From Amphiscolops sp. MND2022 (taxonomy: Eukaryota): a DNA stretch of 64,000 nt. The position numbers were made by a program, and so were the translations under genes. The stretch covers positions 72,354,001 to 72,418,000 of the forward strand of contig OZ076414.1 in assembly GCA_964187785.1 (NCBI GenBank). The letters run 5' to 3'. Positions 4,858 through 56,976 of the stretch are shown here, piece after piece. Each line of letters begins with the position of its first letter. The stretch's first letter is position 1. The notes under the pieces were generated by a model. The model was given only the letters and a program-made list of their open reading frames with translations. It was not told the origin of the DNA and searched no databases.

Positions 4858-5016
4858 AACAAATAAATATCATTGCAAATGCTGATAGCTTCAAACGAAT
4901 ATGTGCTGTAATCATTGTTTTACTCTTTGTTCTCAAGTACTTGTTGAAGAAAGTTTCAAGTGGTTTTGAGTGCTTCAATAACTTTGTGAATTCAGTCTTG
5001 TTTCGCTCCCACTTTA

Positions 5017-6156
5017 TTGGCCGGCGCGATAGCTAATCAACGCGTAGTAAGACATCACATGAACGGTTCTATGGAACGTACTACAGATCAATCTTTCAAT
5101 ATACAGTACCATACTATAGGTCTAAAACGACTAGGACTGGATATACACCGTCGTATAGGACGTATATTTGATCTATCTTTCGTTATACAGTACCAGTACC
5201 ATAATATAGACAAGAATAGGCTATCGTCCGATATTCATGGCTACATAGGACGTATATTTGATCTGTCTTCCAATATACAGAACCATACTATAGACCTGAA
5301 TTGGCTTTCATCCGATATTCATGGCTATAGAGGACGTATATTTGATCTATCATTCAATAAACACTACCATACTATAGGTCTAAAATGGCTAAGACTGGAT
5401 ATACACGGTCGTATAGGAGTCATATTCGACCCATCTTCCAATATACAGTACCATACTTTAGGTCTAAAATGGCTAAGACTGGATATACACGCTCGTATAG
5501 GACTCATATTCGATCTATCTTTCAATATACAGTACCATACTATAGGTCTAAAATGGCTAAGACTGGACATACACGGTCGTATAGGACTCAAATTCGATCT
5601 ATCTTTCAATATACACTACCATACTATAGGTCTAAGGTGGTTAAAACTGGATATAGACGGTCGTATAGGACTCATATTCGACCCATCATTCAATATACAG
5701 TACCATACCATAGACCTGAATAGGCTATCATTCGATATGCATGGCTATATAGGACGTATTTTTGATCTATCTTTTAATATACTGTTACATACTATAGACC
5801 TGTATAGGCTATCATTCGATATACATGGCTATATAGGACGTATATTTGATCTATATTTCAATCTACAGTTCCATACTATAGACCTGAATAGGCTATCATC
5901 CGATATGCATGGCTATATAGGACGTATTTTTGATCTATCTTTTGATATACTGTTACATACTATAGACCTGTATAGGCTATCATTCGATATACATGGCTAT
6001 AGAGGACGTATATTTGATCTATATTTCAATATACAGTTCCATACTATGGACCTGAATAGGCTATCATCCGATATGCATGGCTATATAGGACGTATTTTTG
6101 ATCTATCTTTCAATATACAGTTCCATACTATAGACCTCCATCGCAGGCCGGCATAA
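5017..6156 (+). other. Stop-free frame through the 87-bp minisatellite (379 aa); coding status doubtful
   Basis: Open frame from the ORF track. It begins at TTG (first ATG at ~5059) and has no recognisable domain. Confidence 0.2.
5091..6137. repeat. 87-bp minisatellite, ~12 units, two sub-types
   Basis: 29-aa periodicity in the 5017..6156 translation (FDLSFNIQYHTIGLKWLRLDIHGRIGLI versus FDLSFNIQFHTIDLNRLSSDMHGYIGRI). Confidence 0.95.
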
Positions 6157-6370: not shown

Positions 6371-7171
6371 TCAACATTCAAGGTAACAAGTTGCATAATA
6401 TTCTAGAGTCTCAATCTCTAGTGAGAGCATCGAAAATTGCGAAGTGAGAGCATCGAAAATTGCGAAAGCTTGATTAGCTAAATCTCCTTTAACATTGCAA
6501 GTAAAATTGAGGTGGCATATATTCAGAAGTAATGAAGACATAGGAGTTTTCAATTCAGTATTTCCCGCGTTTCTGTTCAGCTCAACCCGTATTGATCCAC
6601 GTTTAACCCTCATGTTTTCATGAATTTTTATTTTGCGGATTGATCGTTTAGCAGATCTAGTAGTCCCCGTAATCGCATCTTGCAATTCTTTTTCATAACA
6701 TGAAGATATGCCCAAAAATCCAGAACATCCAACTGCAACGATTACTTTGTACTTCTTGGGCTTACGAAGGGGTATGGTTTTCAAGACCTCAATTTTCAAA
6801 AACCCACCAGCTAAAAAATCGATAACTTCAGGTTCAGGAGCTGTTGATTTTACAGTAAAAAGTTGGTGCAAAGATTTGATCTTTCCTTTTGCAACCAATC
6901 TACCAATTTTACTGCAGGGTTTCCAATTTTTGGAATGTTGTTCAATCGCAAAGGACGTTTGGTGGGAGTCTCTCGATAACGCTCCCTTGTTATGCTGGGC
7001 TTGTAAATTGTTGAGGTTCATCAGCCGATAGGGGAGCCTCACTATTTTCGGTGGTTTTGCTCTCGAGGCAAGCAATGAAAATGCTTCATCTGGGCGCTCG
7101 TATTTTTCTTCCCAGAAGTTCCATAAAATGTTCATATAATTATTTTGGTAAGAATGCATAAAAGGATCCAT
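6371..7171 (-). CDS. RPS2-like: Highly divergent ribosomal protein uS5 (40S RPS2)-like protein, intronless, 266 aa
   Basis: Collinear match to eukaryotic uS5: [23 protein letters not shown] ~ [42 protein letters not shown] ~ [44 protein letters not shown] ~ [35 protein letters not shown] ~ RCGSVLVRL; AIFDALT ~ ATFDAIS. Confidence 0.85.
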   Translation of the reverse strand: [266 protein letters not shown]

Positions 7172-14612: not shown

Positions 14613-14821
14613 AATTACCTCTTTCTGCCCACTGTTATCGTCCTGGCAGAAAGATGCCATGATTTTGTTCATGATTATCTATTTATTAGTAGTATTTATA
14701 TCAACTTATTCCTCAGTATTTACCTCTTTTCGCGGCCTATAGTTTTTGTGAAATTGATGATTAGATTGTAAGTAGTCTACAAATTCCCGATACGGCTCAG
14801 AAAACCTTCAAATTTCGAGAA

Positions 14822-18031: not shown

Positions 18032-18194
18032 GTAGAAATTGTCACGAATTAAGTTATTGTCACTTCTGGACTGAAGAAGAGCCAAGTTATTTTATTCGTA
18101 ATGAGCTACAGACTACTGAATAGAAAGATATATAGAAAGATACGAAGCACGTGCGTGTACAATTCCCGCAAAAATATCTACGTGAACTATTCAT

Positions 18195-35881: not shown

Positions 35882-36200
35882 ATTGTCAAATTGTTTTTGT
35901 CGCAAAAAGGTACGACCAAATCTTTAGCCAATACGAAGTTTTTGAACTGACGGGCTCTTTAATGCGAATCCCAAAGTTTCCAGTGAATTTGTTGCAGCTG
36001 GTTTCTGAAGACAATCTTTTTCTCTAGTGAATGGATCTTATCTTTTTGTGACTAGAAATAGAAAAATTCTGTTTTTGGTTTCTAAACATCTAATTTGAAA
36101 GTAGTAGGAAGTACTATCCAAACCGCAGGGGTTGAAACTGGGTGAAGAAAAAATCATCCACTTTTGGTACTTTTCTCTACCTTCCAGAGAAGTGAATGAT

Positions 36201-39200
36201 GAGAGTAACAAGTTCATAATATTGTTTATAACATCATAGAAAAGAAAATCAACAGTATGAAGTTGCTCAAAATTTTCATGTTGAAAGCTGGCCAATGTTT
36301 TTCGGACTTTTGGTGAGCGGGCGATTGTTGGGGTGACTAGGCGTTTCATTATTCCAAATGACTGATGTATGTTATTACAAAATTTTGGAAAATTCAATGT
36401 TCAAACTATTTGCTCATACGTTTGAAAGTTAAACGTCTAGTTTTTTGAGGGCATCAAATCTTGCGAGAGTCAGGTTCACGATGGTGACTCTAGGAAACTT
36501 TCACGAGTCCTTTCCTGCCATTGACCCTGAAGGGTATTGTTCCAAAATGTGCGCAGCGACCAGCATCCTCTGAAAACCCGGAATCGTCTTCTGATGGCGT
36601 TTGCAGATGCCCTTCTCACCGCAGCTTCAGTTTTTCTTACTTTTTTGCCCAAAGCGAAACAGCCTTGTCTGTCGCCTATGGTAATGAAGACTCTATGTCG
36701 AACATGAGTCCTGTTGTCTCTAATTGTCACCATCGGAATTACCTTCGGAACCTCTTGTTGCACTGCTAAATAAAAATTTTACCCTGTTAGTCCTGTAGAT
36801 GTCCAGAGTTCACCAATTAAAATCATTTCCTTTTCGTTCAAAATACTTTTTCTTGATATGAATCTGGCTGATGACATCTAAACTGGTTCTATGTGACAGT
36901 GAGGGTCTACTTATGTTCGTGACTGAAGTTGAGACTTGACATTTTTGTCGTATTGGAAAAAATAACTGCCATGAAAGATCACAAGAACGGAGAAATCTGT
37001 TGCTGAAACGACTGTTAGTGATGTGAATCTTGTACAAGAATGTTTGTTTTTGTTGCCTGGGTCAAAACAATGATAGCATAGATGATATGCCTAGAACTTC
37101 GAAATATTTTGAGACCCCCATGAATTTTCAATGGGAAGTCTGAAATTTATGCGACAACTGAGAATTTAAAGAACAGTAGGCACTGACAAACCGAAAAATT
37201 ATGGGACCACACTAAAACATAAATACCGACACAGCTAAAAAGTATTACTCCTAGAAGATATGGGACATCTAAGCAACTACCCACCGACACCGCAAAACAG
37301 ACGAAGACTAGTATGACTCCTACCATATGGGTCACCTTGGCAGCTACCCACCGTATTGAGATTAACAATATTATAATACTGTTTACAACATCACAGAAAA
37401 GAGAATCAACAGTATGAATATTGCTCAAAATTTTCATGTTGAAAGCTGGCCAATGTATTTCGGACTTTTGGTAACGGGCGATTGCTGGGGTGACTAGGCT
37501 TTTCATATTTCCAAATGACTGATGTATGTTATTACAAAATTTTGGAAAATTCAATGTTCAAACTATTTGCTCATACGTTTGAAAGTTAAACGTCTAGTTT
37601 TTTCAGGGCATCAAATCTTGCGAGAGTCAGGTTCACGATGGTGACTCTAGGAAACTTTCACGAGTCCTTTCCTGCCATTAACCCTGAAGGGTATCGTTTC
37701 CAGAATGTGCGCAGCGACCAGCATCCTCTGAAAACCCGGAATCGTCTTCTGATGGCATTCGCAGATGCCCCTCTCACCGCAACTTGTTTTTCTTACTTTT
37801 TTGCCCAAAGCGAAACAGCCTTGTCTGTCGCCTATGGTAATGAAAACGCTATGTCGAACATGAGTTCCGTTGTCTTTAATTGCCACCATCGGAATTACCT
37901 TCGGAACCTCTTCTTGCACTGCTAAATAAAAAATTTACCCTGTTAGTCCTGTAGATGTCCAGAGTTCACCAATTAAAATCATTTCCTTTTCGTTTTTAAT
38001 ACTTTTTCATGATATGAATGTGGCTGATGACATCTTCTAAACTGGTTCTATGTGACAGTGAGGGTCTACTTATGTTCGTGACTGAGGTTGAGACTTGACA
38101 TTTTTGTCGTATTGGAAAAAATAACTGCCATGAAAGATGACAAGAACGGAGAAATCTGTTGCTGAAACGACTGTTAGTGATGTGAATCTTGTACAAGAAT
38201 GTTTGTTTTTGATGCCTGGGTCAAAACAATGATAGCATAGATGATATGCCTAGAACTTCGAAATCTTTTGAGACCCCCATGAATTTTTAATGGGAAGTCT
38301 GAAATTTATGCGACAACTGAGAATTTAAAGAACAGTAGGTTCAACAAACCGAAAAATTATGGGACCACCCTAAAACATAAATACCGACACTGCTAAAAAG
38401 TATTACTCCTAGAAAATATGGGACATCTAAGCAACTACCCACCGACTCCGCAAAACAGACGAAGACTAGTATGACTCCTACAATATGGGTCACCTTGGCA
38501 GCTACCCACCGTATTGAGATTAACAAGTTTATAATACTGTTTACAACATCACAGAAAAGAAAATAAACAGTATGAAGTTTGCTCAAAATTTTCATGTTGA
38601 AAGCTGGCCAATGTTTTTCGGACTTTTGGTGAGCGGGCGATTGTTGGGGCGACTAGGCTTTTCATATTTCCAAATGACTGATGTATGTTATTACAAAATT
38701 TTGGAAAATTCAATGTTCAAACTATTTTCTCATACGTTTGAAAGTTAAACGTCTAATTTTTTGAGGGCATCAAATCTTGCGAGAGTCAGGTTCACGATGG
38801 TGACTCTAGGAAACTTTCACGAATCCTTTCCTGCCATTGACCCTGAAGGGTATCGTTTCCAAAATGTGCGCAGCGACCAGCATCCTCTGAAAACCCGGAA
38901 TCGTCTTCTGATGGCATTCGCAGATGCCCCTCTCACCGCAACTTGTTTTTCTTACTATTTTGCCCAAAGCGAAACAGCCTTGTCTGTCGCCTATGGTAAT
39001 GAAAACGCTATGTCGAACATGAGTTCCGTTGTCTCTAATTGCCACCATCGGAATTACCTTCGGAACCTCTTCTTGCACTGCTAAATAAAAATTTTACCCT
39101 GTTAGTCCTGTAGATGTCCAGAGTTCAGCAATTAAAATCATTTCCTTTTCGTTTTTAATACTTTTTCATGATATGAATCTGGCTGATGACCTCTTCTAAA

Positions 39201-42200
39201 CTGGTTCTATGTGACAGTGAGGGTCTACTTATGTTCGTGACTGAAGTTGAGACTTGACATTTTTGTCGTATTGGAAAAAATAACTGCCATGAAAGATGAC
39301 AAGAACGGAGAAATCTGTTGCTGAAACGACTGTTAGTGATGTGAATCTTGTACAAGAATGTTTGTTTTTGTTGCCTGGGTCAAAACAATGATAGCATAGA
39401 TGATATGCCTAGAACTTCGAAATCTTTTAAGACCCCCATGAATTTTTAATGGGAAGTCTGAAACCTATGCGACAACTGAGAATTTAAAGAACAGTAGGTT
39501 CAACAAACCGAAAAATTATGGGACCACCCTAAAACATAAATACCGACACTGCTAAAAAGTATTACTCCTAGAAAATATGGGACATCTAAGCAACTACCCA
39601 CCGACACCGCAAAACAGACGAAGACTAGTATGACTCCTACAATATGGGTCACCTTGGCAGCTACCCACCGTATTGAGATTAACAAGTTTATAATACTGTT
39701 TACAACATCACAGAAAAGAAAATCAACAGTATGGAGTTTGCTCAAAATTTTCATGTTGAAAGCTGGCCAATGTTTTTCGGACTTTTGGTGAGCGGGCGAT
39801 TGTTGGGGCGACTAGGCTTTTCATATTTCCAAATGACTGATGTATGTTATTACAAAATTTTGGAAAATTCAATGTTCAAACTATTTTCTCATACGTTTGA
39901 AAGTTAAACGTCTAATTTTTTGAGGGCATCAAATCTTGCGAGAGTCAGGTTCACGATGGTGACTCTAGGAAACTTTCACGAGTCCTTTCCTGCCATTGAC
40001 CCTGAAGGGTATCGTTTCCAAAATGTGCGCAGCGACCAGCATCCTCTGAAAACCCGGAATCGTCTTCTGATGGCATTCGCAGATGCCCCTCTCACCGCAA
40101 CTTGTTTTTCTTACTATTTTGCCCAAAGCGAAACAGCCTTGTCTGTCGCCTATGGTAATGAAAACGCTATGTCGAACATGAGTTCCGTTGTCTCTAATTG
40201 CCACCATCGGAATTACCTTCGGAACCTCTTCTTGCACTGCTAAATAAAAATTTTACCCTGTTAGTCCTGTAGATGTCCAGAGTTCAGCAATTAAAATCAT
40301 TTCCTTTTCGTTTTTAATACTTTTTCATGATATGAATCTGGCTGATGACCTCTTCTAAACTGGTTCTATGTGACAGTGAGGGTCTACTTATGTTCGTGAC
40401 TGAAGTTGAGACTTGACATTTTTGTCGTATTGGAAAAAATAACTGCCATGAAAGATGACAAGAACGGAGAAATCTGTTGCTGAAACGACTGTTAGTGATG
40501 TGAATCTTGTACAAGAATGTTTGTTTTTGTTGCCTGGGTCAAAACAATGATAGCATAGATGATATGCCTAGAACTTCGAAATCTTTTAAGACCCCCATGA
40601 ATTTTTAATGGGAAGTCTGAAACCTATGCGACAACTGAGAATTTAAAGAACAGTAGGTTCAACAAACCGAAAAATTATGGGACCACCCTAAAACATAAAT
40701 ACCGACACTGCTAAAAAGTATTACTCCTAGAAAATATGGGACATCTAAGCAACTACCCACCGACACCGCAAAACAGACGAAGACTAGTATGACTCCTACA
40801 ATATGGGTCACCTTGGCAGCTACCCACCGTATTGAGATTAACAAGTTTATAATACTGTTTACAACATCACAGAAAAGAAAATCAACAGTATGGAGTTTGC
40901 TCAAAATTTTCATGTTGAAAGCTGGCCAATGTTTTTCGGACTTTTGGTGAGCGGGCGATTGTTGGGGCGACTAGGCTTTTCATATTTCCAAATGACTGAT
41001 GTATGTTATTACAAAATTTTGGAAAATTCAATGTTCAAACTATTTTCTCATACGTTTGAAAGTTAAACGTCTAATTTTTTGAGGGCATCAAATCTTGCGA
41101 GAGTCAGGTTCACGATGGTGACTCTAGGAAACTTTCACGAGTCCTTTCCTGCCATTGACTCTGAAGGGTATCGTTTCCAAAATGTGCGCAGCGACCAGCA
41201 TCCTCTGAAAACCCGGAATCGTCTTCTGATGGCATTCGCAGATGCCCCTCTCACCGCAACTTGTTTTTCTTACTATTTTGCCCAAAGCGAAACAGCCTTG
41301 TCTGTCGCCTATGGTAATGAAAACGCTATGTCGAACATGAGTTCCGTTGTCTCTAATTGCCACCATCGGAATTACCTTCGGAACCTCTTCTTGCACTGCT
41401 AAATAAAAATTTTACCCTGTTAGTCCTGTAGATGTCCAGAGTTCAGCAATTAAAATCATTTCCTTTTCGTTTTTAATACTTTTTCATGATATGAATCTGG
41501 CTGATGACATCTTCTAAACTGGTTCTATGTGACAGTGAGGGTCTACTTATGTTCGTGACTGAAGTTGAGACTTGACATTTTTGTCGTATTGGAAAAAATA
41601 ACTGCCATGAAAGATGACAAGAACGGAGAAATCTGTTGCTGAAACGACTGTTAGTGATGTGAATCTTGTACAAGAATGTTTGTTTTTGTTGCCTGGGTCA
41701 AAACAATGATAGCATAGATGATATGCCTAGAACTTCGAAATCTTTTGAGACCCCCATGAATTTTTAATGGGAAGTCTGAAATTTATTCGACAACTGAGAA
41801 ATTAAAGAACAGTAGGTTCAACAAACCGAAAAACTATGGGACCACCCTAAAACATAAATACCGACACTGCTAAAAAGTATTACTCCTAGAAAATATGGGA
41901 CATCTAAGCAACTACCCACCGACACCGCAAAACAGACTAGTATGACTCCTACAATATGGGTCACCTTGGCAGCTACCCACCGTATTGAGATTAACAAGTT
42001 TATAATACTGTTTACAACATCACAGAAAAGAAAATCAACAGTATGAAGTTTGCTCGAAGTTTCCATGTTAAAAGCTGGCCAATGTTTTTCGGACTTTCGG
42101 TGAGCGGGCGATTGTTGGGGTGACTAGGCTTTTCATATTTGCAAATGACCGATGGATGTTATTACAAAATTTTGGAAAATTCAATGTTCAAACTATTTGC

Positions 42201-45200
42201 TCATACGTTTTAAAGCTAAACGTCTAGTTTTTTGAGGGCATCAAATCTTGCGAGAGTCAGGTTCACGATGTTGCCCACGATGGTGACTCCAGGAAACTTT
42301 CACGAGTCCTTTCCTGCCATTGACCCTGAAGGGTATCGTTTCCAAAATGCGCAGCGACCAGCATCCTCTGAAAACCCGGAATCGTCTTCTGATGGCATTC
42401 GCAGATGCCCCTCTCACCGCAACTTCAGTTTTTCTTACTTTTTTGCCCAAAGCGAAGCAGCCTTGTCTGTCGCCTATGGTAATGAAAACTCTATGTCGAA
42501 CACGAGTTCCGTTGTCTCTAATTGCCACCATCGGAATTACCTTCGGAACCTCTTCTTGCACTGCTCAATAGAAATTTTACCCTGTTAGTCCTGTAGATGT
42601 CCAGAGTTCACCAATTAAAATCATTTCCTTTTCGTTTAAAATACTTTTTCATGATATGAATCTGGCTGATGACATCTTCTGATTTGGTTCTATGTGACAG
42701 TGAAGTTCTACTTATGTTCGTGACTGAAGTTGAGACTTGACATTTGTATTGGAAAAAATAACTGCCATGAAAGATGACAAGAACGGAGAAATCTGTTGCT
42801 GAAACGGCTGTTAGTGATGTGAATCTTGTACAAGAATGTTTGTTTTTGTTGCCTGGGTCAAAACAATGACAGCATAGATGATATGCCTAGAACTTCGAAA
42901 TCTTTTGAGACCATGAATTTTTAATGGGAAGTCTGAAATTTATGCGACAACTGAGAATTTAAAGAACAGTAGGTACTGACAAACCGAAAAATTATGGGAC
43001 CACCCTAAAACATAAATACCGACACTCCTAAAAAGTTTTACTCCTAGAAAATATGGGACATCTAAGCAACTACCCACCGACACCGCAAAACAGACGAAGA
43101 CTAGTATGACTCCTACAATATGGGTCACCTTGGCAGCTACCCACCGTTTTGAGATTAACAAAATCATAATACTGTTTACAACATCACTGAAAAGAAAATC
43201 AACAGTATGAAGTTTGCTCGAAATTTTTTTTTGAAAGCTGGCCAATGTTTTTCGGACTTTTGGTGAGCGGGCGATTGTTGGAGGACTAGGCTTTTCATAT
43301 TTCCAAATGACTGATGGATGTTATTACAAATTTTTGGAAAACTCAATGTTCAAACTATTTGCTCATACGTTTTAAAGCTAAACGTCTAGTTTTTTGAGGG
43401 CATCAAATCTTGCGAGAGTCAGGTTCACGATGTTGCCCACGATGGTGACTCTAGGAAACTCTCACGAGTCCTTTCCTGCCATTGACCCTGAAGGGTATCG
43501 TTTCCAAAATGTGCGCAGCGACCAGCATCCAACTTTTTTGCCCAAAGCGAAACAGCCTTGTCTGTCGCCTATGGTAATGAAAACTCTATGTCGAACATGA
43601 GTTCCGTTGTCTCTAATTGCCACCATCGGAATTACCTTCGGAACCTCTTCTTGCACTGCTCAATAGAAATTTTACCCTGTTAGTCCTGTAGAGTTCACCA
43701 ATTAAAATCATTTCCTTTTCGTTTAAAATACTTATTCATGATATGAATCTGGCTGATGACATCTTCTAATTTGGTTCTATGTGACAGTGAAGTTCTACTT
43801 ATGTTTGTGACTGAAGTTGAGACTTGACAATCGTATTGGAAAAAATAACTGCCATGAAAGATGACAAGAACGGAGAAATCTGTTGCTGAAACGGCTGTTA
43901 GTGATGTGAATCTTGTACAAGAATGTTTGTTTTTGTTGCCTGGGTCAAAACAATGATAGCATAGATGATATGCCTAGAACTTCGAAATCTTTTGAGACCA
44001 TGAATTTTTAATGGGAAGTCTGAATTTTATGCGACAACTGAGAATTTAAAGAACAGTAGGTACCGACAAACCGAAAAATTATGGGACCACCCTAAAACAT
44101 AAATACCGACACTGCTAAAAAGTATTACTCCTAGAAAATATGGGACATCTAAGCAACTACCCACCGACACCGCAAAACAGACGAAAACTAGTATGACTCC
44201 TACAATATGGGTCACCTTGGCAGCTACCCACCGTATTGAGATTAACAAGTTTATAATACTGTTTACAACATCACAGAAAAGAAAATCAACAGTATGAAGT
44301 TTGCTCGAAGTTTCCATGTTAAAAGCTGGCCAATGTTTTTCGGACTTTCGGTGAGCGGGCGATTGTTGGGGTGACTAGGCTTTTCATATTTCCAAATGAC
44401 TGATGGGTGTTATTACAAATTTTTGGAAAATTCAGTGTTCAAACTATTTGCTCATACGTTTTAAAGCTAAACGTCTAGTTTTTTGAGGGCATCAAATCTT
44501 GCGAGAGTCAGGGTCACGATGTTGCTCACGATGGTGACTCTAGGAAACTCTCACGAGTCCTTTCCTGCCATTGACCCTGAAGGGTATCGTTTCCAAAATG
44601 TGCGCAGCGACCAGCATCCTCTGAAACCCCGGAATCGTCTTCTGATGGAATTCGCAGATGCCCCTCTCACCGCAACTTCAGTTTTTCTAACTTTTTTGCC
44701 CAAAGCGAAACAGCCTTGTCTGTCGCCTATGGTAATGAAAACTCTATGTCGAACATGAGTTCCGTTGTCTCTAATTGCCACCATCGGAATTACCTTCGGA
44801 TCCTCTTCTTGCACTGCTCAATAGAAATTTTACCCTGTTAGTCCTGTAGAGTTCACCAATTAAAATCATTTCCTTTTCTTTTAAAATACTTTTTCATGAT
44901 ATGAATCTGGCTGATGACATCTTCTTATTTGGTTCTATGTGACAGTGAAGTTCTACTTATGTTCGTGACAGAAGTGGAGACTTGACATTTGTATTGGAAA
45001 AAATAACTGCCATGAAAGATGACAAGAACGGAGAAATCTGTTGCTGAAACGGCTGTTGGTGATGTGAATCTTGAACAAGAATGTTTGTTTTTGTTGCCTG
45101 GGTCAAAACAATGATAGCATAGATGATATGCCTAGAACTTCGAAATCTTTTGAGACCCCATGAATTTTTAATAGGAAGTCTGAAATTTATGCGACAACTG

Positions 45201-48200
45201 AGAAGTTAAAGAACAGTAGGTACTGACAAACCGAAAAATTATGGGACCACCCTAAAACATAAATACCGACACTGCTAAAAAGTATTACTCCTAGAAAATA
45301 TGGGACATCTAAGCAACTACCCACCGATACCGCAAAACAGACGAAGACTAGTATGACTCCTACAATATGGGTCACCTTGGCAGCTACCCACCGTATTGAG
45401 ATTAACAAGTTTATAATACTGTTTACAACATCACAGAAAAGAAAATCAACAGTATGAAGTTTGCTCAAAATTTTCATGTTGAAAGCTGGCCAACGTTTTT
45501 CTGACTTTTGGTGAGCGGGCGATTGTTGGGGTGACTAGGCTTTTCATATTTCCAAATGACTGATGGATGTTATTACAAAATTTTGGAAAATTCAGTATTC
45601 AAACTATTTGCTCATACGTTTTGAAGCTAAACGTCTAGTTTTTTGAGGGCATCAAATCTTGCGAGAGTCAGGTTCACGATGTTGCCCACGATGGTGACTC
45701 TAGGAAACTCTCACGAGTCCTTTCCTGCCATTGACCCTGAAGGGTATCGTTTCCAAAATGTGCGCAGCGACCAGCATACTCTGAAACCCCGGAATCGTCT
45801 TCTGATGACATTCGCAGATGCCCCTCTCACCGCAACTTCAGTTTTTCGAACTTTTTTGCCCAAAGCGAAACAGCCTTGTCTGTCGCCTATGGTAATGAAA
45901 ACTCTATGTCGAACATGAGTTCCGTTGTCTCTAATTGCCACCATCCGAATTACCTTCGGATCCTCTTCTTGCACTGCTCAATAGAAATTTTACCCTGTTA
46001 GTCCTGTAGAGTTCACCAATTAAAATCATTTCCTTTTCTTTTAAAATACTTTTTCATGATATGGATCTGGCTGATGACATCTTCTAATTTGGTTCTATGT
46101 GACAGTGAAGTTCTACTTATGTTCGTGACTGAAGTGGAGACTTGACATTTGTATTGGAAAAAATAACTGCCATGAAAGATGACAAGAACGGAGAAATCTG
46201 TTGCTGAAACGGCTGTTAGTGATGTGAATCTTGTACAAGAATGTTTGTTTTTGTTGCCTGGGTCAAAACAATGATAGCATAGATGATATGCCTAGAACTT
46301 CGAAATCTTTTGAGACCCCATGAATTTTTAATAGGAAGTCTGAAATTTATTCGACAACTGAGAAGTTAAAGAACAGTAGGTACTGACAAACCGAAAAATT
46401 ATGGGACCACCCTAAAACAAATACCGACACTGCTAAAAAGTATTACTCCTAGAAAATATGGGACATCTAAGCAACTACCCACCGACACCGCAAAACAGAC
46501 GAAGACTAGTATGACTCCTACAATATGGGTCACCTTGGCAGCTACCCACCGTATTGAGATTAACAAGTTTATAATACTGTTTACAACATCACAGAAAAGA
46601 AAATCAACAGTATGTTTGCTCAAAATTTTCATGTTGAAAGCTGGCCAACGTTTTCTGACTTTTGGTGAGCGGGCGATTGTTGGGGTGACTAGGCTTTTCA
46701 TATTTCCAAATGACTGATGGATGTTATTACAAAATTTTGGAAAATTCAGTATTCAAACTATTTGCTCATACGTTTTGAAGCTAAACGTCTAGTTTTTTGA
46801 GGGCATCAAATCTTGCGAGAGTCAGGTTCACGATGTTGCCCACGATGGTGACTCTAGGAAACTCTCACGAGTCCTTTCCTGCCATTGACCCTGAAGGGTA
46901 TCGTTTCCAAAATGTGCGCAGCGACCAGCATCCTCTGAAACCCCGGAATCGTCTTCTGATGGCATTCGCAGATGACCCTCTCACCGCAACTTCAGTTTTT
47001 CTAACTTTTTTGCCCAAAGCGAAACAGCCTTGTCTGTCGCCTATGGTAATGAAAACTCTATGTCGAACATGAGTTCCGTTGTCTCTAATTGCCACCATCG
47101 GAATTACCTTCGGATCCTCTTCTTGCACTGCTCAATAGAAATTTTACCCTGTTAGTCCTGTAGAGTTCACCAATTAAAATTTCCTTTTCTTTTAAAATAC
47201 TTTTTCATGATACGAATCTGGCTGATGACATCTTCTAATTTGGTTCTATGTGACAGTGAAGTTCTACTTATGTTCGTGACTGAAGTGGAGACTTGACATT
47301 TGTATTGGAAAAAATAACTGCCATGAAAGATGACAAGAACGGAGAAATCTGTTGCTGAAACGGCTGTTAGTGATGTGAATCTTGTACAAGAATGTTTGTT
47401 TTTGTTGCCTGGGTCAAAACAATGATAGCATAGATGATATGCCTAGAACTTCGAAATCTTTTGAGACCCCATGAATTTTTAATAGGAAGTCTGAAATTTA
47501 TGCGACAACTGAGAAGTTAAAGAACAGTAGGTACTGACAAACCGAAAAATTATGGGACCACCCTAAAACAAATACCGACACTGCTAAAAAGTATTACTCC
47601 TAGAAAATATGGGACATCTAAGCAACTACCCACCGACACCGCAAAACAGACGAAGACTAGTATGACTCCTACAATATGGGTCACCTTGGCAGCTACCCAC
47701 CGTATTGAGATTAACAAGTTTATAATACTGTTTACAACATCACAGAAAAGAAAATCAACAGTATGTTTGCTCAAAATTTTCATGTTGAAAGCTGGCCAAC
47801 GTTTTCTGACTTTTGGTGAGCGGGCGATTGTTGGGGTGACTAGGCTTTTCATATTTCCAAATGACTGATGGATGTTATTACAAAATTTTGGAAAATTCAG
47901 TATTCAAACTATTTGCTCATACGTTTTGAAGCTAAACGTCTAGTTTTTTTGAGGGCATCAAATCTTGCGAGAGTCAGGTTCACGATGTTGCCCACGATGG
48001 TGACTCTAGGAAACTCTCACGAGTCCTTTCCTGCCATTGACCCTGAAGGGTATCGTTTCCAAAATGTGCGCAGCGACCAGCATCCTCTGAAACCCCGGAA
48101 TCGTCTTCTGATGGCATTCGCAGATGACCCTCTCACCGCAACTTCAGTTTTTCTAACTTTTTTGCCCAAAGCGAAACAGCCTTGTCTGTCGCCTATGGTA

Positions 48201-51200
48201 ATGAAAACTCTATGTCGAACATGAGTTCCGTTGTCTCTAATTGCCACCATCGGAATTACCTTCGGATCCTCTTCTTGCACTGCTCAATAGAAATTTTACC
48301 CTGTTAGTCCTGTAGAGTTCACCAATTAAAATTTCCTTTTCTTTTAAAATACTTTTTCATGATACGAATCTGGCTGATGACATCTTCTAATTTGGTTCTA
48401 TGTGACAGTGAAGTTCTACTTATGTTCGTGACTGAAGTGGAGACTTGACATTTGTATTGGAAAAAATAACTGCCATGAAAGATGACAAGAACGGAGAAAT
48501 CTGTTGCTGAAACGGCTGTTAGTGATGTGAATCTTGTACAAGAATGTTTGTTTTTGTTGCCTGGGTCAAAACAATGATAGCATAGATGATATGCCTAGAA
48601 CTTCGAAATCTTTTGAGACCCCATGAATTTTTAATAGGAAGTCTGAAATTTATGCGACAACTGAGAAGTTGAAGAACAGTAGGTACTGACAAACCGAAAA
48701 ATTATGGGACCACCCTAAAACATAAATACCGACACTGCTAAAAAGTATTACTCCTAGAAAATATGGGACATCTAAGCAACTACCCACCGACACCGCAAAA
48801 CAGACGAAGACTAGTATGACTCCTACAATATGGGTCACCTTGGCAGCTACCCACCGTATTGAGATTAACAAGTTTATAATACTGTTTACAACATCACAGA
48901 AAAGAAAATCAACAGTATGAAGTTTGCTCAAAATTTTCATGTTGAAAGCTGGCCAATGTTTTTTCGGACTTTTTGTCAGCGGGCGATTGTTGGGGTGACT
49001 AGGCTTTTCATATTTCCAAATGACTGATGGATGTTATTACAAAATTTTGGAAAATTCAGTATTCAAACTATTTGCTCATACGTTTTAAAGCTAAACGTCT
49101 AGTTTTTTGAGGGCATCAAATCTTGCGAGAGTCAGGTTCACGATGTTGCCCACGATGGTGACTCTAGGAAACTCCCACGAGTCTTTTCCTGCCATTGACC
49201 CTGAAGGGTACCGTTTCCAAAATGTGCGCAGCGACCAGCATCCTCTGAAAACCCGGAATCGTCTTCTGATGGCATTCGCAGATGCCCCTCTCACCGCAAC
49301 TTCAGTTTTTCTTACTTTTTTTGCCCAAAGCGAAACAGCCTTGTCTGTCGCCTATGGTAATGAAAACTCTGTCGAACATGAGTTCCGTTGTCTCTAATTG
49401 CCACCATCGGAATTACCTTCGCTACCTCTTCTTGCACTGCTAAATAGAAATTTTACCCTGTTAGTCCTGTAGATGACCAGAGTTCACCAATTAAAATCAT
49501 TTCCTTTTCGTTTAAACTACTTTTTCATGATATGAATCTGGCTGATGACATCTTCTAATTTGGTTCTATGTGACAATGAAGTTCTACTTATGTTCGTGAC
49601 TGAAGTTGAGACTTGACATTTGTATTGGAAAAAATAACTGCCATGAAAGATGACAAGAACGGAGAAATCTGTTGCTGAAACGGCTGTTAATGATGTGAAT
49701 CTTGTACAAGAATGTTTTTGTTGCCTGGGTCAAAACAATGATAGCATAGATGATATGCCTAGAACTTCGAAATCTTTTGAGACCCCCATGAATTTTTAAT
49801 GGGAAGTCTGAAATTTATGCGACAACTGAGAATTTCAAGAACAGTAGGCACTGACAAACCGAAAAATTATGGGACCACCCTAAAACATAAATACCGACAC
49901 TGCTAAAAAGTATTACTCCTAGAAAATATGGGACATCTAAGCAACTACCCACCGACACCGCAGAACAGACGAAGACTAGTATGACTCCTACAATATGGGT
50001 CACCTTGGCAGCTACCCACTGTATTGAGATTAACAAGTTTGTAATACTGTTTACAACATCACAGAAAAGAAAATCAACAGTTTGGAGTTTGCTCAAAATT
50101 TTCATGTTGAAAGCTGGCCAACGTTTTTCGGACTTTTGGTGAGCGGGCGATTGTCGGGGTGACTAGGCTTTTCATATTTCCAAATGACTGATGGATGTTA
50201 TTACAAAATTTTGGAAAATTCAGTATTCAAACTATTTGCTCATACGTTTTGAAGCTAAACGTCTAGTTTTTTGAGGGCATCAAATCTTACAAGAGTCAGG
50301 TTCACGATGTTGCCCACGATGGTGACTCTAGGAAACTCTCACGAGTCCTTTCCTGCCATTGACCCTGAAGGGTACCGTTTCCAAAATGTGCGCAGCGACC
50401 AGCATCCTCTGAAAACCCGGAATTGTCTTCTGATGGCATTCGCAGATGCCCCTCTCACCGCAACTTCAGTTTTTCTTACTTTTTTGCCCAAAGCGAAACA
50501 GCCTTGTCTGTCGCCTATGGTAATGAAAACTCTGTCGAACATGAGTTCCGTTGTCTCTAATTGCCACCATCGGAATTACCTTCGCTACCTCTTCTTGCAC
50601 TGCTAAATAGAAATTTTACCCTGTTAGTCCTGTAGATGTCCAGAGTTCACCAATTAAAATCATTTCCTTTTCGTTCAAAATACTTTTTCATGATATGAAT
50701 CTGGCTGATGACATCTTCTAATTTGGTTCTATGTGACAGTGAAGTTCTACTTAAGTTCGTGACTGAAGTTGAGACTTGACATTTGTATTGTAAAAAATAA
50801 CTGCCATGAAAGATGACAAGAACGGAGAAATCTGTTGCTGAAACGGCTGTTAATGATGTGAATCTTGTACAAGAATGTTTGTTTTTGTTGCCAGGGTCAA
50901 AACAATGATAGCATAGATGATATGCCTAGAACTTCGAAATCTTTTGAGACCCCCATGAATTTTTAATGGGAAGTCTGAAATTTATGCGACAACTGAGAAT
51001 TTCAAGAACAGTAGGCACTCAAAAACCGAAAAATTATGGGACCACCCTAAAACATAAATACCGACACTGCTAAAAAGTATTACTCCTAGAAAATATGGGA
51101 CACCTAAGCAACTACCCACCGACACCGCAAAACAGACGAAGACTAGTATGACTCCTACAATATGGGTCACCTTGGCAGCTACCCAGTGTATTGAGATTAA

Positions 51201-52355
51201 CAAGTTTATAATACTGTTTACAACATCACATCACAGAAAAGAAAATCAACAGTATGAAGTTTGCTCAAAATTTTCATGTTGAAAGCTGGCCAATGTTTTT
51301 TCGGACTTTTTGTCAGCGGGCGATTGTTGGGGTGACTAGGTTTTTCATATTTCCAAATGACTGATGGATGTTATTACAAAATTTTGGAAAATTCAGTATT
51401 CAAACTATTTGCTCATACGTTTTAAAGCTAAACGTCTAGTTTTTTGAGGGCATCAAATCTTGCGAGAGTCAGGTTCACGATGTTGCCCACGATGGTGACT
51501 CTAGGAAACTCCCACGAGTCCTTTCCTGCCATTGACCCTGAAGGGTACCGTTTCCAAAATGTGCGCAGCGACCAGCATCCTCTGAAAACCCGGAATCGTC
51601 TTCTGATGGCATTCGCAGATGCCCCTCTCACCGCAACTTCAGTTTTTCTTACTTTTTTGCCCAAAGCGAAACAGCCTTGTCTGTCGCCTATGGTAATGAA
51701 AACTCTGTCGAACATGAGTTCCGTTGTCTCTAATTGCCACCATCGGAATTACCTTCGCTACCTCTTCTTGCACTGCTAAATAGAAATTTTACCCTGTTAG
51801 TCCTGTAGATGACCAGAGTTCACCAATTAAAATCATTTCCTTTTCGTTTAAACTACTTTTTCATGATATGAATCTGGCTGATGACATCTTCTAATTTGGT
51901 TCTATGTGACAATGAAGTTCTACTTATGTTCGTGACTGAAGTTGAGACTTGACATTTGTATTGGAAAAAATAACTGCCATGAAAGATGACAAGAACGGAG
52001 AAATCTGTTGCTGAAACGGCTGTTAATGATGTGAATCTTGTACAAGAATGTTTGTTTTTGTTGCCTGGGTCCAAACAATGATAGCATAGATGATATGCCT
52101 AGAACTTCGAAATCTTTTGAGACCCCCATGATTTTTTAATGGGAAGTCTGAAATTTATGCGACAACTGAGAATTTCAAGAACAGTAGGCACTGAAAAACC
52201 GAAAAATTATGGGACCACCCTAAAACATAAATACCGACACAGCTGAAAAGTTACTCCTAGTAAATATGGGACATCTAAACAACTACCCACCGACACCGCA
52301 ACTCAGACGAAGACTAGTATGACTCCTACAATATGGGTCACCTTGGCAGCTACCC
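36201..52355 (-). repeat. Tandem array of a ~1.16-kb unit, ~14 copies, each with a degenerate uS5-like gene
   Basis: Recurring ORF sets at 36476, 37647, 38806, 39965, 41124, 42241, 43462, 44551, 45711, 46865, 48017, 49091, 50339 and 51428; 1159-bp spacing among units 3-5. Confidence 0.97.
42232..42660 (-). pseudogene. RPS2-like: uS5 (RPS2)-like pseudogene, representative array copy
   Basis: VQEEVPKVIPM...RVRHRVFITIGDRQGCFALGKK...AVRGA...VFRGCW...TIPFRVNGRKGLVKV, then in another frame GNIVNLTLARFDALKKL. Compare uS5 LKDEVLKIMPV...[20 protein letters not shown]...AIRGA...VRRGYW...TVPCKVTGRCGSVLV...GNFAKATFDAI. No copy has all segments in one frame. Confidence 0.8.
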
Positions 52356-53107
52356 GCCGACGAACTAACGGGCTCTCGAAAGACGAATGTTTCTCTTGTC
52401 CTGCTTATGCGTTTTCGAACGTTTTGGCTTTGCACCCATCAAGCGCTGATAAGAATGATCAAAGCTTTGAATGGACATAAGGAATCTGGAAGAGCCAATA
52501 TTGGTAGCTATGATCCATAGCTTGCGGCCGGACGATAGCTTGGCAATACTCTCTCCCCCAGCTGGTTCGATATGTACACATGTCATCCAAGGCCCCTTCG
52601 CTGCGAAAAGTGCCTTGGAACCAGCTTTGATGTAGTCCGGAGCAAGACAATTGACAGCCGAGTCAGGCAACACAAATGAGCACGTTCTGCTGCCTTCAAG
52701 ACCCCGGTTGTCCCTTCCCTTGCTGCGACTTGTAACAGTGACTCCTGCTGACTGCAAAAATTCCGAGAACGCACAAGCACCCTTATTCGAAAGTGACTTG
52801 ACTCTGGGAGCCAAATCAGAGACTGTCTGCTGCAGCGCCTCGAACCACCGTGGGGATAGTTGGAAATTTGATCCCCCAGCTGAAAATGGAGACCACCAAC
52901 AGTGGAAGAATTCCCCTCTGTCGTCACGCCAGTCCTCCACCCTCCTCCACTTCAGCGAAAACCTCCTCAACACGACTCTCTTCTGGGACTGTTGGAGGCA
53001 CCTCCTCGCCGTCACTAACCTCCGCACCCGCGTCCACCGTTTCTGCTGAATTCATTGCAAAATCTGAAATCAATAAAGAATCTACCGATCCTTCAATGCG
53101 GGCGGTA
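52356..53107 (-). pseudogene. JmjC-domain gene, 5' part (copy 1, truncated before the distal His)
   Basis: FAAKGPWMTCVHIEPAGGESIAKLSSGRKLWIIA is present; the sequence is cut after KRNIR by the uS5 array. Confidence 0.75.
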
Positions 53108-53424
53108 TGTTGAAGCACAACTAAATCAAGCAGATGAAATCAAAACGTGAAATTTTCTAAACTTTCAAATCTCAAAGTATTCATGCTAACTAACACTCAC
53201 ATGCAAATTTGTACACGTCATTGCTAACTTAATTTGTTCATTTTCTCATTTCCCACAGTTTCTGTCACTTTAGTGAAAATCAGTCGAGTTGAAACTTTAC
53301 CTTGCTCTCCCACTTTTCAACAAATTAGATTGATTCTAATTTAAACATTCATCAAATTAGATTGATTCTATTTTACAATTGCAACAAATTAGATTGATTC
53401 TAATGTACAACACACGGAACAACA
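53108..53424 (+). mobile_element. BEL/Pao LTR, copy 1 (317 bp)
   Basis: TGTTG...CAACA termini, internal CAAATTAGATTGATTCTA x3, followed by a PBS-like TTTTGG and gag. Confidence 0.9.
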
Positions 53425-53427
53425 TTT

Positions 53428-53447
53428 TGGTACCGTATCGACCCGGG
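53428..53447 (+). promoter_or_regulatory. Primer-binding-site-like sequence (also ~57297 and ~59914)
   Basis: TGGTACCGTATCGACCCGGG three bases after the LTR end; cognate tRNA not identified. Confidence 0.6.
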
Positions 53448-53469
53448 AAAAGCCAGAATTGTTTCTCAA

Positions 53470-54580
53470 AATATCTGCAAAGTACGCCGACAAAACAGTT
53501 GACCAATTGAAACGGTCAAGATCTGCAATGCTTGGTGTGATCACCAAAATTCGCAACGAAGCCCAACCACTTTTGAAAAAAAAAGTAATCTGCTAGATGA
53601 AGACATTGATTTGCTGAATTACTGAAAGAAAAAGCTTGAAACCAAGGTTGAGGAAATTGCTCATCTGAATGCTGCACTTGTCGAAGTTACACCAGACAAT
53701 GATGCCGACATGGAAAGGGAGCTTGAAGATGCAGAAAATGCTGAACGCAAAAGTGGTACCCTTCTTGAAGCAGTCAGTCATATTTTGGAACAAATCGATG
53801 AAACTGATGCATCGCCAGCACTCCTTCAAGAAACAACAACCGCCACATCCAATAGTCACAGCAGCCATATCAAGATACTCAAATTCGATTTGCCTAAATT
53901 AAACGGCCAATACAAGAAGTGGATTCCCTTTTATGAGCAATTTATGGCATCAGTCGATAGTAATCCCAACATTCCAGCAATTCAAAAATTCAATTATCTG
54001 AAAGCCTCACTTACTGACGAAGCTCTTCAATTAGTCGCTCACTTGCCGTTATCAAACTCGAATTATCCAATTGCTTTGAAGTCCTTGTTGACCGCTATAA
54101 CAATCCTAGATTGATTCTCAACAGTCATTTAGATGTTATCCTCAACTTGAAGTCAATGAAGGGCGATTCGGCATCTGAGTTACGCAAATTGTTTGTCACA
54201 TTTGAAGAAAATTTGATGGCGATCAAGGCTCTAGAACTCGGAGACAATTTAGAAGACTTCATTTGGGTACCAATGCATGCAGAAAGATTGGATCAAGTTT
54301 CGAGAGCTCTTTAGGAAAACGACTACCCTGGGACCAAACCACAAACCCTGACGCAGTTACGAGAGTTTATTAGCAGAAGAGCTCAAGCTCTTGAAGCAGC
54401 CACAAGGTCAACTCACAAGGCTTCGGAAGGTCCACATCTTAAAGGTAATTCTCAAAAGAAATCACAAAACACTCAAAACTACAAGGTTAGTGTTGAAAAG
54501 TGTCCTTGTTGTTCGGAAAATCATACAGTTTATACTTGAAAGAAATTCACTGATATGAGTACTTAACGAACTAGTTTGTA
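53470..54580 (+). pseudogene. BEL/Pao gag (DUF1759 + start of Zn knuckle), copy 1
   Basis: FDLPKLNGQYKKWIPFYEQFMASVDSNPNIPAIQKFNYLKASLTDEALQLVAHLPLSNSNYPIAL (DUF1759), then LILNSHLDVILNL and CPCCSENH. Stops and frameshifts; no pol. Confidence 0.9.
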
Positions 54581-54840
54581 AACCATAGTTAACGGAGCCC
54601 TCAAAGTGTTCCAGTACATCACTCCGAGAGGGGAAGATCTAACAGACGTCTCAGTACGGGAAAGAGAAATTGCTGGATTCAGACTGACTTGAACTTGAAA
54701 CTTACGCCAGGCTGCCAGTGCAAGCTTCCAGTCCCTGGCAGTCAAAAGTGACAACAACTTATCCTTTCCGTACATCTTCAACCACTGTGAGATATAGCCT
54801 CTTCCGCAACCCGTACTAAAACTGTTAAAAGCAATGCTTG
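54563..54840 (-). pseudogene. JmjC gene, 3' fragment
   Basis: SIAFNSFSTGCGRGYISQWLKMYGKDKLL..., the same sequence as 58431-58705 but with 2 extra nt that keep the frame. Confidence 0.7.
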
Positions 54841-56221
54841 ACCACCCTAAAACATAAATACCGACACTGCTAAAAAGTAATACTCCTAGAAAATATGGGA
54901 CATCTAAGCAACTACCCACCGACACCGCAAAACAGACGAAGACTAGTATGACTCCTACAATATGGGTCACCTTGGCAGCTACCCACTGTATTGAGATTAA
55001 CAAGTTTATAATACTGTTTACAACATCACAGAAAAGAAAATCAACAGTATGAAGTTTGCTCAAAATTTTCATGTTGAAAGCTGGCCAATGTTTTTTTGGA
55101 CTTTTTGTCAGCGGGCGATTGTTGGGGTGACTAGGCTTTTCATATTTCCAAATGACTGATGGATGTTATTACAAAATTTTGGAAAATTCAGTATTCAAAC
55201 TATTTGCTCATACGTTTTAAAGCTAAACTTCTAGTTTTTTGAGGGCATCAATTCTTGCGAGAGTCAGGTTCACGATGTTGCCCACGATGGTGACTCTAGG
55301 AAACTCTCACGAGTCCTTTCCTGCCATTGACCCTGAAGGGTATCGTTTCCAAAATGTGCGCAGCGACCAGCATCCTCTGAAACCCCGGAATCGTCTTCTG
55401 ATGGCATTCGCAGATGCCCCTCTCACCGCAACTTCAGTTTTTCTTACTTTTTTCCCAAAGCGAAACAGCCTTGTCTGTCGCCTATGGTAATGAAAACTCT
55501 ATGTCGAACATGAGTTCCGTTGTCTCTAATTGCCACCATCGGAATTACCTTCGCTACCTCTTCTTGCACTGCTAAATAGAAATTTTACCCTGTTAGTCCT
55601 GTAGATGTCCAGAGTTCACCAATTAAAATCATTTCCTTTTCGTTTAAACTACTTTTTCATGATATGAATCTGGCTGATGACATCTTCTAATTTGGTTCTA
55701 TGTGACAATGAAGTTCTACTTATGTTCGTGACTGAAGTTGAGACTTGACATTTGTATTGGAAAAAATAACTGCCTTGAAAGATGACAAGAACGGAGAAAT
55801 CTGTTGCTGAAACGACTGTTAGTGATGTGAATCTTGTACAAGAATGTTTGTTTTTGTTGCGTGGGTCAAAACAATGATAGCATAGATGATATGCCTAGAA
55901 CTTCGAAATCTTTTGAGACCCCCATGAATTTTTAATGGGAAGTCTGAAATTTATGCGAAAACTGAGAATTTAAAGAACAGTAGGTACTGACAAACCGAAA
56001 AATTATGGGACCGCCCTAAAACATAAATACCGACACAGCTGAAAAGTTACTCCTAGAAAATATGGGACATCTAAGCAACTACCCACCGACACCGCAAAAC
56101 ACACGAAGACTCTAGTATGACTCCTAAAAATATGGGACACCAATGCAACTACCCACCGACACCGCAACTCAGACGAAGACTAGTATGACTCCTACAATAT
56201 GGGTCACCTTGGCAGCTACCC
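54841..56221 (-). repeat. Displaced copy of the 1.16-kb uS5 unit, lying inside a JmjC gene
   Basis: Same sequence as the array units; shares diagnostic variants (TTTAAACTAC, GACAATGAAG, TTTTGTCAGC) with units at ~49000 and ~51400. Confidence 0.9.
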
Positions 56222-56976
56222 GCCGACGAACTAACGGGCTCTCGAAAGACGAATGTTTCTCTTGTCCTGCTTATGCGTTTTCGAACGTTTTGACTTTGCA
56301 CCCATCAAGCGCTGATAAGAATGATCAAAGCTTTGAATGGACATAAGGAATCTGGAAGAGCCAATATTGGTAGCTATGATCCATAGCTTGCGGCCGGACG
56401 ATAGCTTGGCAATACTCTCTCCCCCCAGCTGGTTCGATATGTACACATGTCATCCAAGGCCCCTTCGCTGCGAAAAGTGCCTTGGAACCAACTTTGATGT
56501 AGTCCGGAGCAAGACAATTGACAGGCGAGTCAGGCAACACAAATGAGCACGTTCTGCTGCCTTCAAGACCCCGGTTGTCCCTTCCCTTGCTGCGACTTGT
56601 AACAGTGACTCCTGCTGACTGCAAAAATTCCGAGAACGCACAAGCACCCTTATTCGAAAGTGACTTGACTCTGGGAGCCAAATCACAGAGACTGTCTGCT
56701 GCAGCGCCTCGAACCACCGTGGGGACAGTTGGAAATTTGATCCCCCAGCTGAAAATGGAGACCACCAACAGTGGAAGAATTCCCCTCTGTCGTCACGCCA
56801 GTCCTCCACCCTCCTCCACTTCAGCGAAAACCTCCTCAACACGACTCTCTTCTGGGACTGTTGGAGGCACCTCCTCGCCGTCACTAACCTCCGCACCCGC
56901 GTCCACCGTTTCTGCTGAATTCATTGCAAAATCTGAAATCAATAAAGAATCTACCGATCCTTCAATGCGGGCGGTA
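56222..56976 (-). pseudogene. JmjC gene, 5' part (copy 2)
   Basis: ORF 56325..56768 contains PTVVRGAAADSL and KGPWMTCVHIEP; a frameshift follows and the distal His region is missing. Confidence 0.75.

What the first reader, a model, noticed from the sequence alone, without database searches (positions are those of the whole stretch)
36201..56221. A second, different uS5 paralogue amplified ~15-fold in tandem
Seen: each 1.16-kb unit encodes segments collinear with uS5, from LDIY...K through EEV.K, FITIGD..G..ALG and TIP.RV.G to RFDALKKL. It is not a copy of the 6371 gene (different N-terminus and loops), and no unit carries all segments in one frame. So one 64-kb window holds two independent, very divergent uS5 derivatives. 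Inference: a lineage-specific uS5-derived family under birth-and-death evolution; the array may be a dead amplicon or a source of small or antisense RNAs against the family.
Basis: partly seen in the sequence, partly recalled or inferred. Interest (0 to 1): 0.7.

Follow-up and report, generated by a model that had tools for sequence, protein, structure and literature searches.

The report
Dead tandem copies of virus-borne uS5 gene
The 20-kb array is about 15 head-to-tail copies of a broken piece of a ribosomal-protein-uS5-like gene that this animal's virus-like Maverick elements carry in hundreds of copies; the array itself is neutral junk, though the gene family behind it is unusual.

Summary
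Window 36200-56225 holds about 15.2 units of about 1159 bp. On the minus strand each unit carries a remnant of a gene derived from eukaryotic cytosolic uS5 (RPS2). No unit is intact.

The uS5-like family is real and very large: at least 150 loci score above the Pfam cut-off and more than 300 are candidates. It is not a host paralogue family. In six loci on four chromosomes, including this window at 2.4-7.2 kb, the uS5-like gene faces the 3' end of a protein-primed polymerase B. One fully read element also carries an rve integrase, so the carriers are Mavericks/Polintons.

Between element lineages the gene evolved under purifying selection (omega about 0.14). The array evolved neutrally. Every unit that can be scored shares a deletion of the S5_C core, diversity is the same in the gene part and the flanks, and changes fall evenly on the three codon positions. 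The gene was therefore dead before it was amplified.

The array is present and collinear on a second haplotype contig. Its right edge lies inside a 3.87-kb higher-order duplication.

This scan had already found the same Maverick-borne uS5 family elsewhere in this genome. I found no paper describing it.

The parts
36200..52359 (-). Main block of the array: a partial unit (36200-36824), 13 full units of about 1159 bp (36825-51834) and a partial unit (51835-52359).
42204..42604 (-). Best-preserved uS5 remnant (unit 5). The ORF 42244-42564 covers the S5 N-domain and the start of the C-domain. The last helix (RFDALKKL) lies in another frame at 42287-42204.
45609..46235 (-). uS5-like gene remnant of the reference unit, about 627 bp. 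This is the only part of the unit with a relative elsewhere in the genome (C6:18.307 Mb, 68-74% nt identity, also broken).
44868..45608 (-). Non-gene half of a unit, about 530 bp. It includes a roughly 70-bp motif that translates into a hydrophobic 84-101 aa ORF. It has no Pfam hit and no similarity to the Maverick 84-bp minisatellite; only short motif hits occur elsewhere. Its origin is unknown.
52360..54839 (.). One 2.48-kb copy of the neighbouring 2.6-kb repeat (Pao-type gag DUF1759 ORF at 53710-54114), lying between array units.
54840..56225 (-). Displaced array pieces: unit positions 1-783, 635-1160 and 635-747. The array/2.6-kb-repeat junction at 56226 is 160/161 identical to the one at 52360, so 52360-56225 is a 3.87-kb higher-order duplication and not a fresh insertion.
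2425..4848 (+). Context in the same window: remnant of a Maverick protein-primed polymerase B, 76-83% aa identical to an intact 1466-aa copy.
5086..6137 (.). Context: the 84-bp minisatellite that lies between polymerase B and the uS5-like gene in Mavericks of this genome.
6371..7171 (-). Context: the other uS5-like gene of the window, in the same convergent synteny. It belongs to a different, very distant lineage of the family.

Best explanation
The array is a non-functional, satellite-like tandem amplification of a 1.16-kb segment. The segment consists of about 630 bp of an already broken uS5-like gene plus about 530 bp of unrelated sequence.

The gene belongs to a family derived from eukaryotic cytosolic uS5 (RPS2). 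In this animal that family is carried by Maverick/Polinton virus-like elements as the gene beyond, and convergent with, the polymerase B gene.

Shown:
- the uS5 homology;
- the Maverick synteny of the family, including the array's nearest protein relative;
- the core deletion shared by the units;
- neutral divergence of the units;
- indels specific to blocks of neighbouring units;
- presence of the array on a second haplotype.

Inferred:
- A terminal Maverick fragment lost its S5_C core.
- It was then duplicated and expanded by unequal crossing-over in a repeat-rich region 2.6 Mb from the chromosome end.
- It has since drifted without function.
For: uS5 origin. The best PDB hits are all eukaryotic 40S uS5.

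Size and shape of the family:
- 347 candidates for PF00333; all 150 scored are above the cut-off.
- 318 candidates for PF03719.
- deep subfamilies, each with near-identical copies. The array units form one clade (support 99), nearest to L064 (C6:18.3 Mb) and L052 (C8:0.24 Mb).

Maverick carriage:
- Polymerase B (PF03175, E 2.1e-11) and its homologues lie 2-3 kb from the uS5-like gene and convergent with it, in L074 (C1:89.2 Mb), L075 (C2:28.7 Mb), L077 (C8, next to L052), L079 (= C1:102.5 Mb), L080 (= C6:31.8 Mb) and window 2425-7171.
- L081 shows rve integrase (PF00665), a weak adenain-like protease match, the 1466-aa polymerase B and the uS5-like gene in one 16-kb block.
- The genome has 1908 first-look candidates for polymerase B.

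Selection on the family: between lineages dN is 0.31 and dS about 2.2, giving omega about 0.14. Between near-identical copies omega is 0.15-1.4.

The array is dead:
- Every unit that can be scored lacks about 28-35 codons of the S5_C core.
- 14 of 15 units share a +2 frameshift.
- Further indels are shared by neighbouring blocks: U01-04, U06-10 and U11-13.
- Nucleotide diversity is 0.030 in the gene part against 0.033 and 0.036 in the flanks.
- Variable sites fall 13/11/12 on the three codon positions.

The array is real: a second contig, 99.5% identical over 20.3 kb, is collinear through about 12 units.
Against: - No Maverick backbone gene lies next to the array itself.
- The non-gene half of the unit matches nothing identifiable. 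Descent of the unit from a Maverick therefore rests on the gene's family membership and on its nearest protein relative lying beside polymerase fragments.
- Transcription and small RNAs were not examined, so a role at the RNA level is not excluded.
- Pfam's own S5 model stays under its cut-off on single units.
- Both contigs that show the array come from one sample (ERZ25074608), the same species or individual as the reference.
Confidence: 0.8

Rival explanations
1. One reading: a host uS5 paralogue family under birth-and-death evolution, with the array as one amplified and dying member.
For: There are many divergent copies, some in tandem clusters with open frames: C7:42.17 Mb, C6:51.32 Mb, C12:37.27 Mb and C3:58.05 Mb. 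The array has no Maverick genes beside it.
Against: All six loci read with context show the fixed position next to polymerase B. Near-identical copies are scattered over many chromosomes. Selection is seen between lineages and relaxed between recent copies, as for transposon genes.
Confidence: 0.06
2. The array is dead as a gene but is transcribed and processed into small RNAs (a piRNA-type source) against Mavericks that carry the gene. This can hold together with the best explanation.
For: This rests on inference only. In general knowledge, transposon-derived repeat clusters in animals are frequent piRNA sources. The region is packed with element remains and arrays.
Against: No expression data could be obtained. 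The array is only 68-74% identical in DNA to its nearest relative found. That is too far for efficient small-RNA targeting of the copies seen. No active close relative was found.
Confidence: 0.15
3. The short ORFs of 87-107 aa, which hold the double-stranded-RNA-binding-like S5 N-domain, are expressed as functional truncated proteins.
For: Several units keep an open N-domain frame.
Against: Start codons and frames differ between units. Changes fall evenly on codon positions and diversity equals that of the flanks.
Confidence: 0.03
4. The array is an assembly artefact: an over-expanded repeat.
For: Long near-identical repeats are prone to mis-assembly.
Against: Units differ by block-specific indels and 1-6% substitutions. 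Two separate contigs, one 100% and one 99.5% identical, show the same order of units over 20 kb.
Confidence: 0.02

Closest known systems
Maverick/Polinton (polintovirus) elements and their cargo genes
   Same: Relatives of the array's gene lie in elements with a protein-primed polymerase B and an rve integrase, the pair that defines Polintons (abstract of PMC5499653, seen). Cargo uptake by Polintons is known, for example the nematode case cited in PMC11131425.
   Different: None of the listed papers from two full-text searches combines uS5, RPS2 or ribosomal protein S5 with Maverick or Polinton, and the stony-coral polintovirus paper never uses the word ribosomal. The array itself has no element backbone left.
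Virus-encoded ribosomal proteins (phage bS21, bL12 and others; eL40 of giant viruses)
   Same: A mobile, virus-like genome carries a homologue of a ribosomal protein kept under purifying selection. This parallels PMC6375957 and PMC11499249.
   Different: uS5 does not occur in the text of PMC6375957. The abstract of PMC11499249 presents eL40 as the first ribosomal protein of a eukaryotic virus. Here the protein is trimmed and very diverged, and nothing shows that it enters ribosomes.
Satellite-like tandem arrays derived from pieces of transposable elements
   Same: Head-to-tail units of fixed length, neighbours most alike, block-wise shared indels, neutral drift.
   Different: The unit is long (1.16 kb). 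It holds most of a protein-gene remnant plus about 530 bp of unknown origin.
Host cytosolic uS5 (RPS2), PF00333 + PF03719
   Same: Collinear N-domain and last helix; 35% identity over 93 residues to the host's own uS5.
   Different: The S5_C core is deleted and the frame is broken in every unit. The host's canonical genes are elsewhere, at C5:0.87 Mb and C5:66.37 Mb, scoring 107.6 bits.

Membership tests
uS5 / Ribosomal_S5 (PF00333 + PF03719) | N-terminal S5 domain (double-stranded-RNA-binding-like) | tested here: met
   PDB phmmer E 2.8e-9 to 40S uS5. tblastn with the host uS5 gives E 1.5e-9. The family profile gives E 1.8e-28. Pfam alone is under its cut-off, 23.7 against 27.1 bits.
uS5 / Ribosomal_S5 (PF00333 + PF03719) | C-terminal S5_C domain | tested here: not met
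   About 28-35 codons of the core (the PAPRG...AGI part) are missing in every unit that can be scored. Only the last helix remains. No S5_C hit on any unit.
uS5 / Ribosomal_S5 (PF00333 + PF03719) | One open reading frame through the protein | tested here: not met
   Frameshifts and stops occur in all 15 units.
Maverick/Polinton element (the carrier of the gene family) | [quoted passage not shown] | tested here: met
   PF03175 at E 2.1e-11 on L075. Homologues lie next to the uS5-like gene in six loci. None lies next to the array itself.
Maverick/Polinton element (the carrier of the gene family) | Retrovirus-like (rve) integrase in the same element | tested here: met
   PF00665 on a 314-aa product at L081:7947-8891, co-oriented with the polymerase at 13192-17592. 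This was seen in one element only.
Maverick/Polinton element (the carrier of the gene family) | Adenain-like cysteine protease | tested here: inconclusive
   PF00770 at E 0.0017-0.0029, under its cut-off, at the same position in two elements.
Maverick/Polinton element (the carrier of the gene family) | Double jelly-roll major capsid, penton and packaging ATPase | not tested
   The conserved 473-477 aa and 243-284 aa neighbours have no Pfam hit. No fold prediction was run.
Maverick/Polinton element (the carrier of the gene family) | Terminal inverted repeats | tested here: inconclusive
   No inverted repeat of 40 nt or more in the 21.4 kb of L081. The element's ends may lie outside the locus.
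Tandem (satellite-like) repeat | Head-to-tail units of constant period, with neighbours most alike | tested here: met
piRNA or small-RNA source locus | Strand-specific small RNAs that map to the array | not testable with these tools

The most novel reading that the evidence does not exclude
The array is not mere debris. It would be a transcribed trap whose small RNAs silence Mavericks carrying the uS5-like gene. That gene is itself an undescribed virus-like-element copy of a core ribosomal protein, kept by selection, possibly to enter or mimic the host 40S subunit.
Probability: 0.12. Interest if true: 0.6.

Novelty: new member of a known kind. Interest (0 to 1): 0.35.

Why it matters
The array itself is ordinary: it is a neutral tandem repeat made from a piece of a mobile element. 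It matters in two ways.

First, it removes a false lead. This is not a second host ribosomal-protein paralogue.

Second, it adds to the evidence that this animal's Mavericks carry a selected gene derived from uS5, in hundreds of copies. I found no paper describing that, and eukaryotic virus-like elements with ribosomal-protein genes are very rare. Earlier reports of this scan had already found the same family on other DNA of this genome, so this window adds detail and not a discovery.

Tried and rejected
I did not try to get the same answer from any other tool.
- Known RNAs in the array: no Rfam family and no tRNA in 34-58 kb.
- Origin of the non-gene half of the unit: only short motif hits elsewhere (C12:7.68 Mb, C1627, C30). 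Those loci hold no uS5 or Maverick protein match. There is no similarity to the Maverick 84-bp minisatellite.
- Relatives outside this species:
  - The word search found 10 proteins, all from the sample ERZ25074608. One of its contigs is 100% identical to a locus of this genome.
  - IMG/VR gave none.
  - JGI metagenomes gave only ordinary uS5 at 25-36% identity.
  - The full family alignment was too divergent for a pattern search.
- Terminal inverted repeats in L081: none found.
- Organism: the canonical uS5 is 80-83% identical to arthropod and nematode proteins, which is not diagnostic.
- Exact look-up of ten array ORFs: only one, an antisense ORF, is on record.

Full report
What is there

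A unit of the array, searched against the window, gives the following on the + strand:
- a partial unit at 36200-36824;
- thirteen full units at 36825-51834;
- a partial unit at 51835-52359;
- a 2.48-kb copy of the neighbouring 2.6-kb repeat at 52360-54839;
- more unit pieces at 54840-56225.

This is about 15.2 units of 1151-1173 bp (one is 1087 bp). Units are 94-100% identical at aligned positions, and neighbours are the most alike.

The junction between the array and the 2.6-kb repeat at 52360 is 160/161 identical to the one at 56226. The apparent insertion is therefore part of a 3.87-kb higher-order tandem duplication and not a fresh transposon insertion.

The region holds no Rfam family and no tRNA.

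The uS5 signal is real

The supporting scores are:
- The host's own canonical uS5 exon aligns to 42564-42295 at E 1.5e-9, 35% identity over 93 residues.
- The ORF 42244-42564 matches solved eukaryotic 40S uS5 chains at E 2.8e-9; archaeal S5 scores lower.
- A profile iterated from the canonical protein through the genome's family scores array ORFs at E 1.8e-28 to 2e-13.
- Pfam's N-domain model alone stays below its cut-off on single units (best 23.7 against 27.1 bits).

The natural pieces answer the question without it.

The array and the gene at 6371-7171 share no similarity detectable by BLASTP and lie far apart in the family tree.

The units are dead and were dead before amplification

- Compared with intact relatives, every unit that can be scored lacks about 28-35 codons of the S5_C core. 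Only the last helix remains, usually out of frame.
- Fourteen of fifteen units share a +2 frameshift inside the gene.
- Further indels are shared by blocks of neighbours (units 1-4, 6-10 and 11-13), as expected from stepwise unequal exchange.
- Nucleotide diversity is the same in the gene part (0.030) as in the flanks (0.033 and 0.036).
- Variable sites fall 13/11/12 on the three codon positions.

There is no coding constraint.

The array is not an assembly artefact

Two contigs of a separate assembly (sample ERZ25074608) hold the array. One is identical to the window. The other is 99.5% identical over 20.3 kb and collinear through about twelve units, which fits a second haplotype. Both come from the same species or individual as the reference.

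What the gene family is

The 1.07-Gb genome has 347 first-look candidates for the S5 N-domain. All 150 scored are above the Pfam cut-off. Two of them, on C5 at 107.6 bits, are the canonical genes. There are 318 candidates for S5_C. Most have open frames of 150-290 aa, on all chromosomes.

The tree shows deep lineages, each with near-identical copies.

In every locus I could read with context, the gene lies 2-3 kb beyond a protein-primed polymerase B and convergent with it, usually across an 83-84-bp minisatellite. The loci are:
- C1:89.2 Mb;
- C2:28.7 Mb;
- C8:0.24 Mb;
- C1:102.5 Mb;
- C6:31.8 Mb;
- this window itself (polymerase remnant 2425-4848, minisatellite 5086-6137, gene 6371-7171).

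One element, read over 21 kb, has an rve integrase, a weak adenain-like protease match, the 1466-aa polymerase and the uS5-like gene in one block. Polymerase B plus integrase is the pair that defines Polintons (abstract of PMC5499653, seen). The genome has about 1900 candidates for polymerase B.

Between lineages the gene shows dN 0.31 against a saturated dS of about 2.2, so omega is about 0.14. Between recent copies omega is 0.15-1.4. This is the pattern of a gene selected while the element is active and drifting after insertion.

Where the array fits

Its units form one clade (support 99). The nearest relatives are a broken copy at C6:18.3 Mb (68-74% nt identity over the gene only) and L052 at C8:0.24 Mb. 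L052 lies next to polymerase B fragments in the usual orientation.

The other half of the unit, about 530 bp, matches nothing identifiable. No Maverick backbone gene adjoins the array.

Most likely history (inferred)

- A terminal Maverick fragment with a deleted S5_C core, plus adjoining sequence, was duplicated.
- It expanded by unequal crossing-over. The region is full of arrays: 130 bp x 54, 61 bp x 10, 84 bp x 12.5 and 2.6 kb x 4. It lies 2.6 Mb from the end of a 75-Mb chromosome.

Other tandem clusters of the gene exist at C7:42.17 Mb, C6:51.32 Mb, C12:37.27 Mb and C3:58.05 Mb. Tandem amplification of this part of the element therefore recurs.

What is known

- None of the listed papers from two full-text searches combines uS5, RPS2 or ribosomal protein S5 with Maverick or Polinton.
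- The stony-coral polintovirus paper does not mention ribosomal genes.
- The survey of virus-encoded ribosomal proteins does not mention uS5.
- The abstract of a 2024 paper presents eL40 as the first ribosomal protein of a eukaryotic virus.
- No relative above ordinary-uS5 similarity was found in IMG/VR or JGI metagenomes.
- Earlier reports of this scan reached the same reading for other loci of this genome, including a four-copy tandem cluster 21 Mb upstream on the same chromosome. I took the Maverick lead from them and tested it independently here.

Limits

An RNA-level role is not excluded.
- More genomic context could not be fetched.
- The capsid module and terminal repeats of the carrier elements were not confirmed.
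- The organism was not identified beyond being an invertebrate-like animal.

Verdict

The array is a neutral, dead amplicon of a Maverick-borne uS5-like gene fragment and is ordinary in itself. It derives from an unusual gene family that this scan has already reported.

Noticed in passing
window 52280-56306: The array/2.6-kb-repeat junction occurs twice, 160/161 identical. So 52360-56225 is a 3.87-kb higher-order tandem duplication that joins the two arrays, not a new insertion.
   Followed up: yes
window 2425-7171: A gutted Maverick end lies in the same window: polymerase B remnant (+), 84-bp minisatellite, uS5-like gene 6371-7171 (-). The synteny is the same as in intact elements elsewhere.
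   Followed up: yes
G000 C1:26.077/26.088 Mb, C6:69.347/69.360 Mb, C3:27.738/27.753 Mb: Identical-scoring uS5-like hits occur as inward-facing inverted pairs 10-15 kb apart. Some Maverick lineages may carry the gene at both ends. This was not seen in L081.
   Followed up: partly
L076 (G000 C7:42168000-42177999) and the C7:42.17-42.19 Mb hits: Intact 241-aa uS5-like ORFs are duplicated 1943 bp apart, followed by more than 3 kb of 84-bp minisatellite. The pair recurs three times within 17 kb.
   Followed up: partly
L077 (G000 C8:230000-239999): Polymerase B fragments are themselves in a 3.85-kb tandem duplication beside the array's nearest protein relative.
   Followed up: partly
window 36521-55490, + strand: Long ORFs of 82-118 aa run antisense to the uS5 remnant in most units. 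A public gene caller recorded one of them as a protein (P0131). There is no family hit, and they are probably chance frames.
   Followed up: partly
window 18194-25300: A 130-bp satellite, 54 copies, 98% matches.
   Followed up: no
L074:4039-6966 and L075:2728-6204: The Maverick polymerase B proteins begin with a weak C2H2 zinc-finger match. One also has a weak endonuclease VII match (PF02945, E 6e-4).
   Followed up: no
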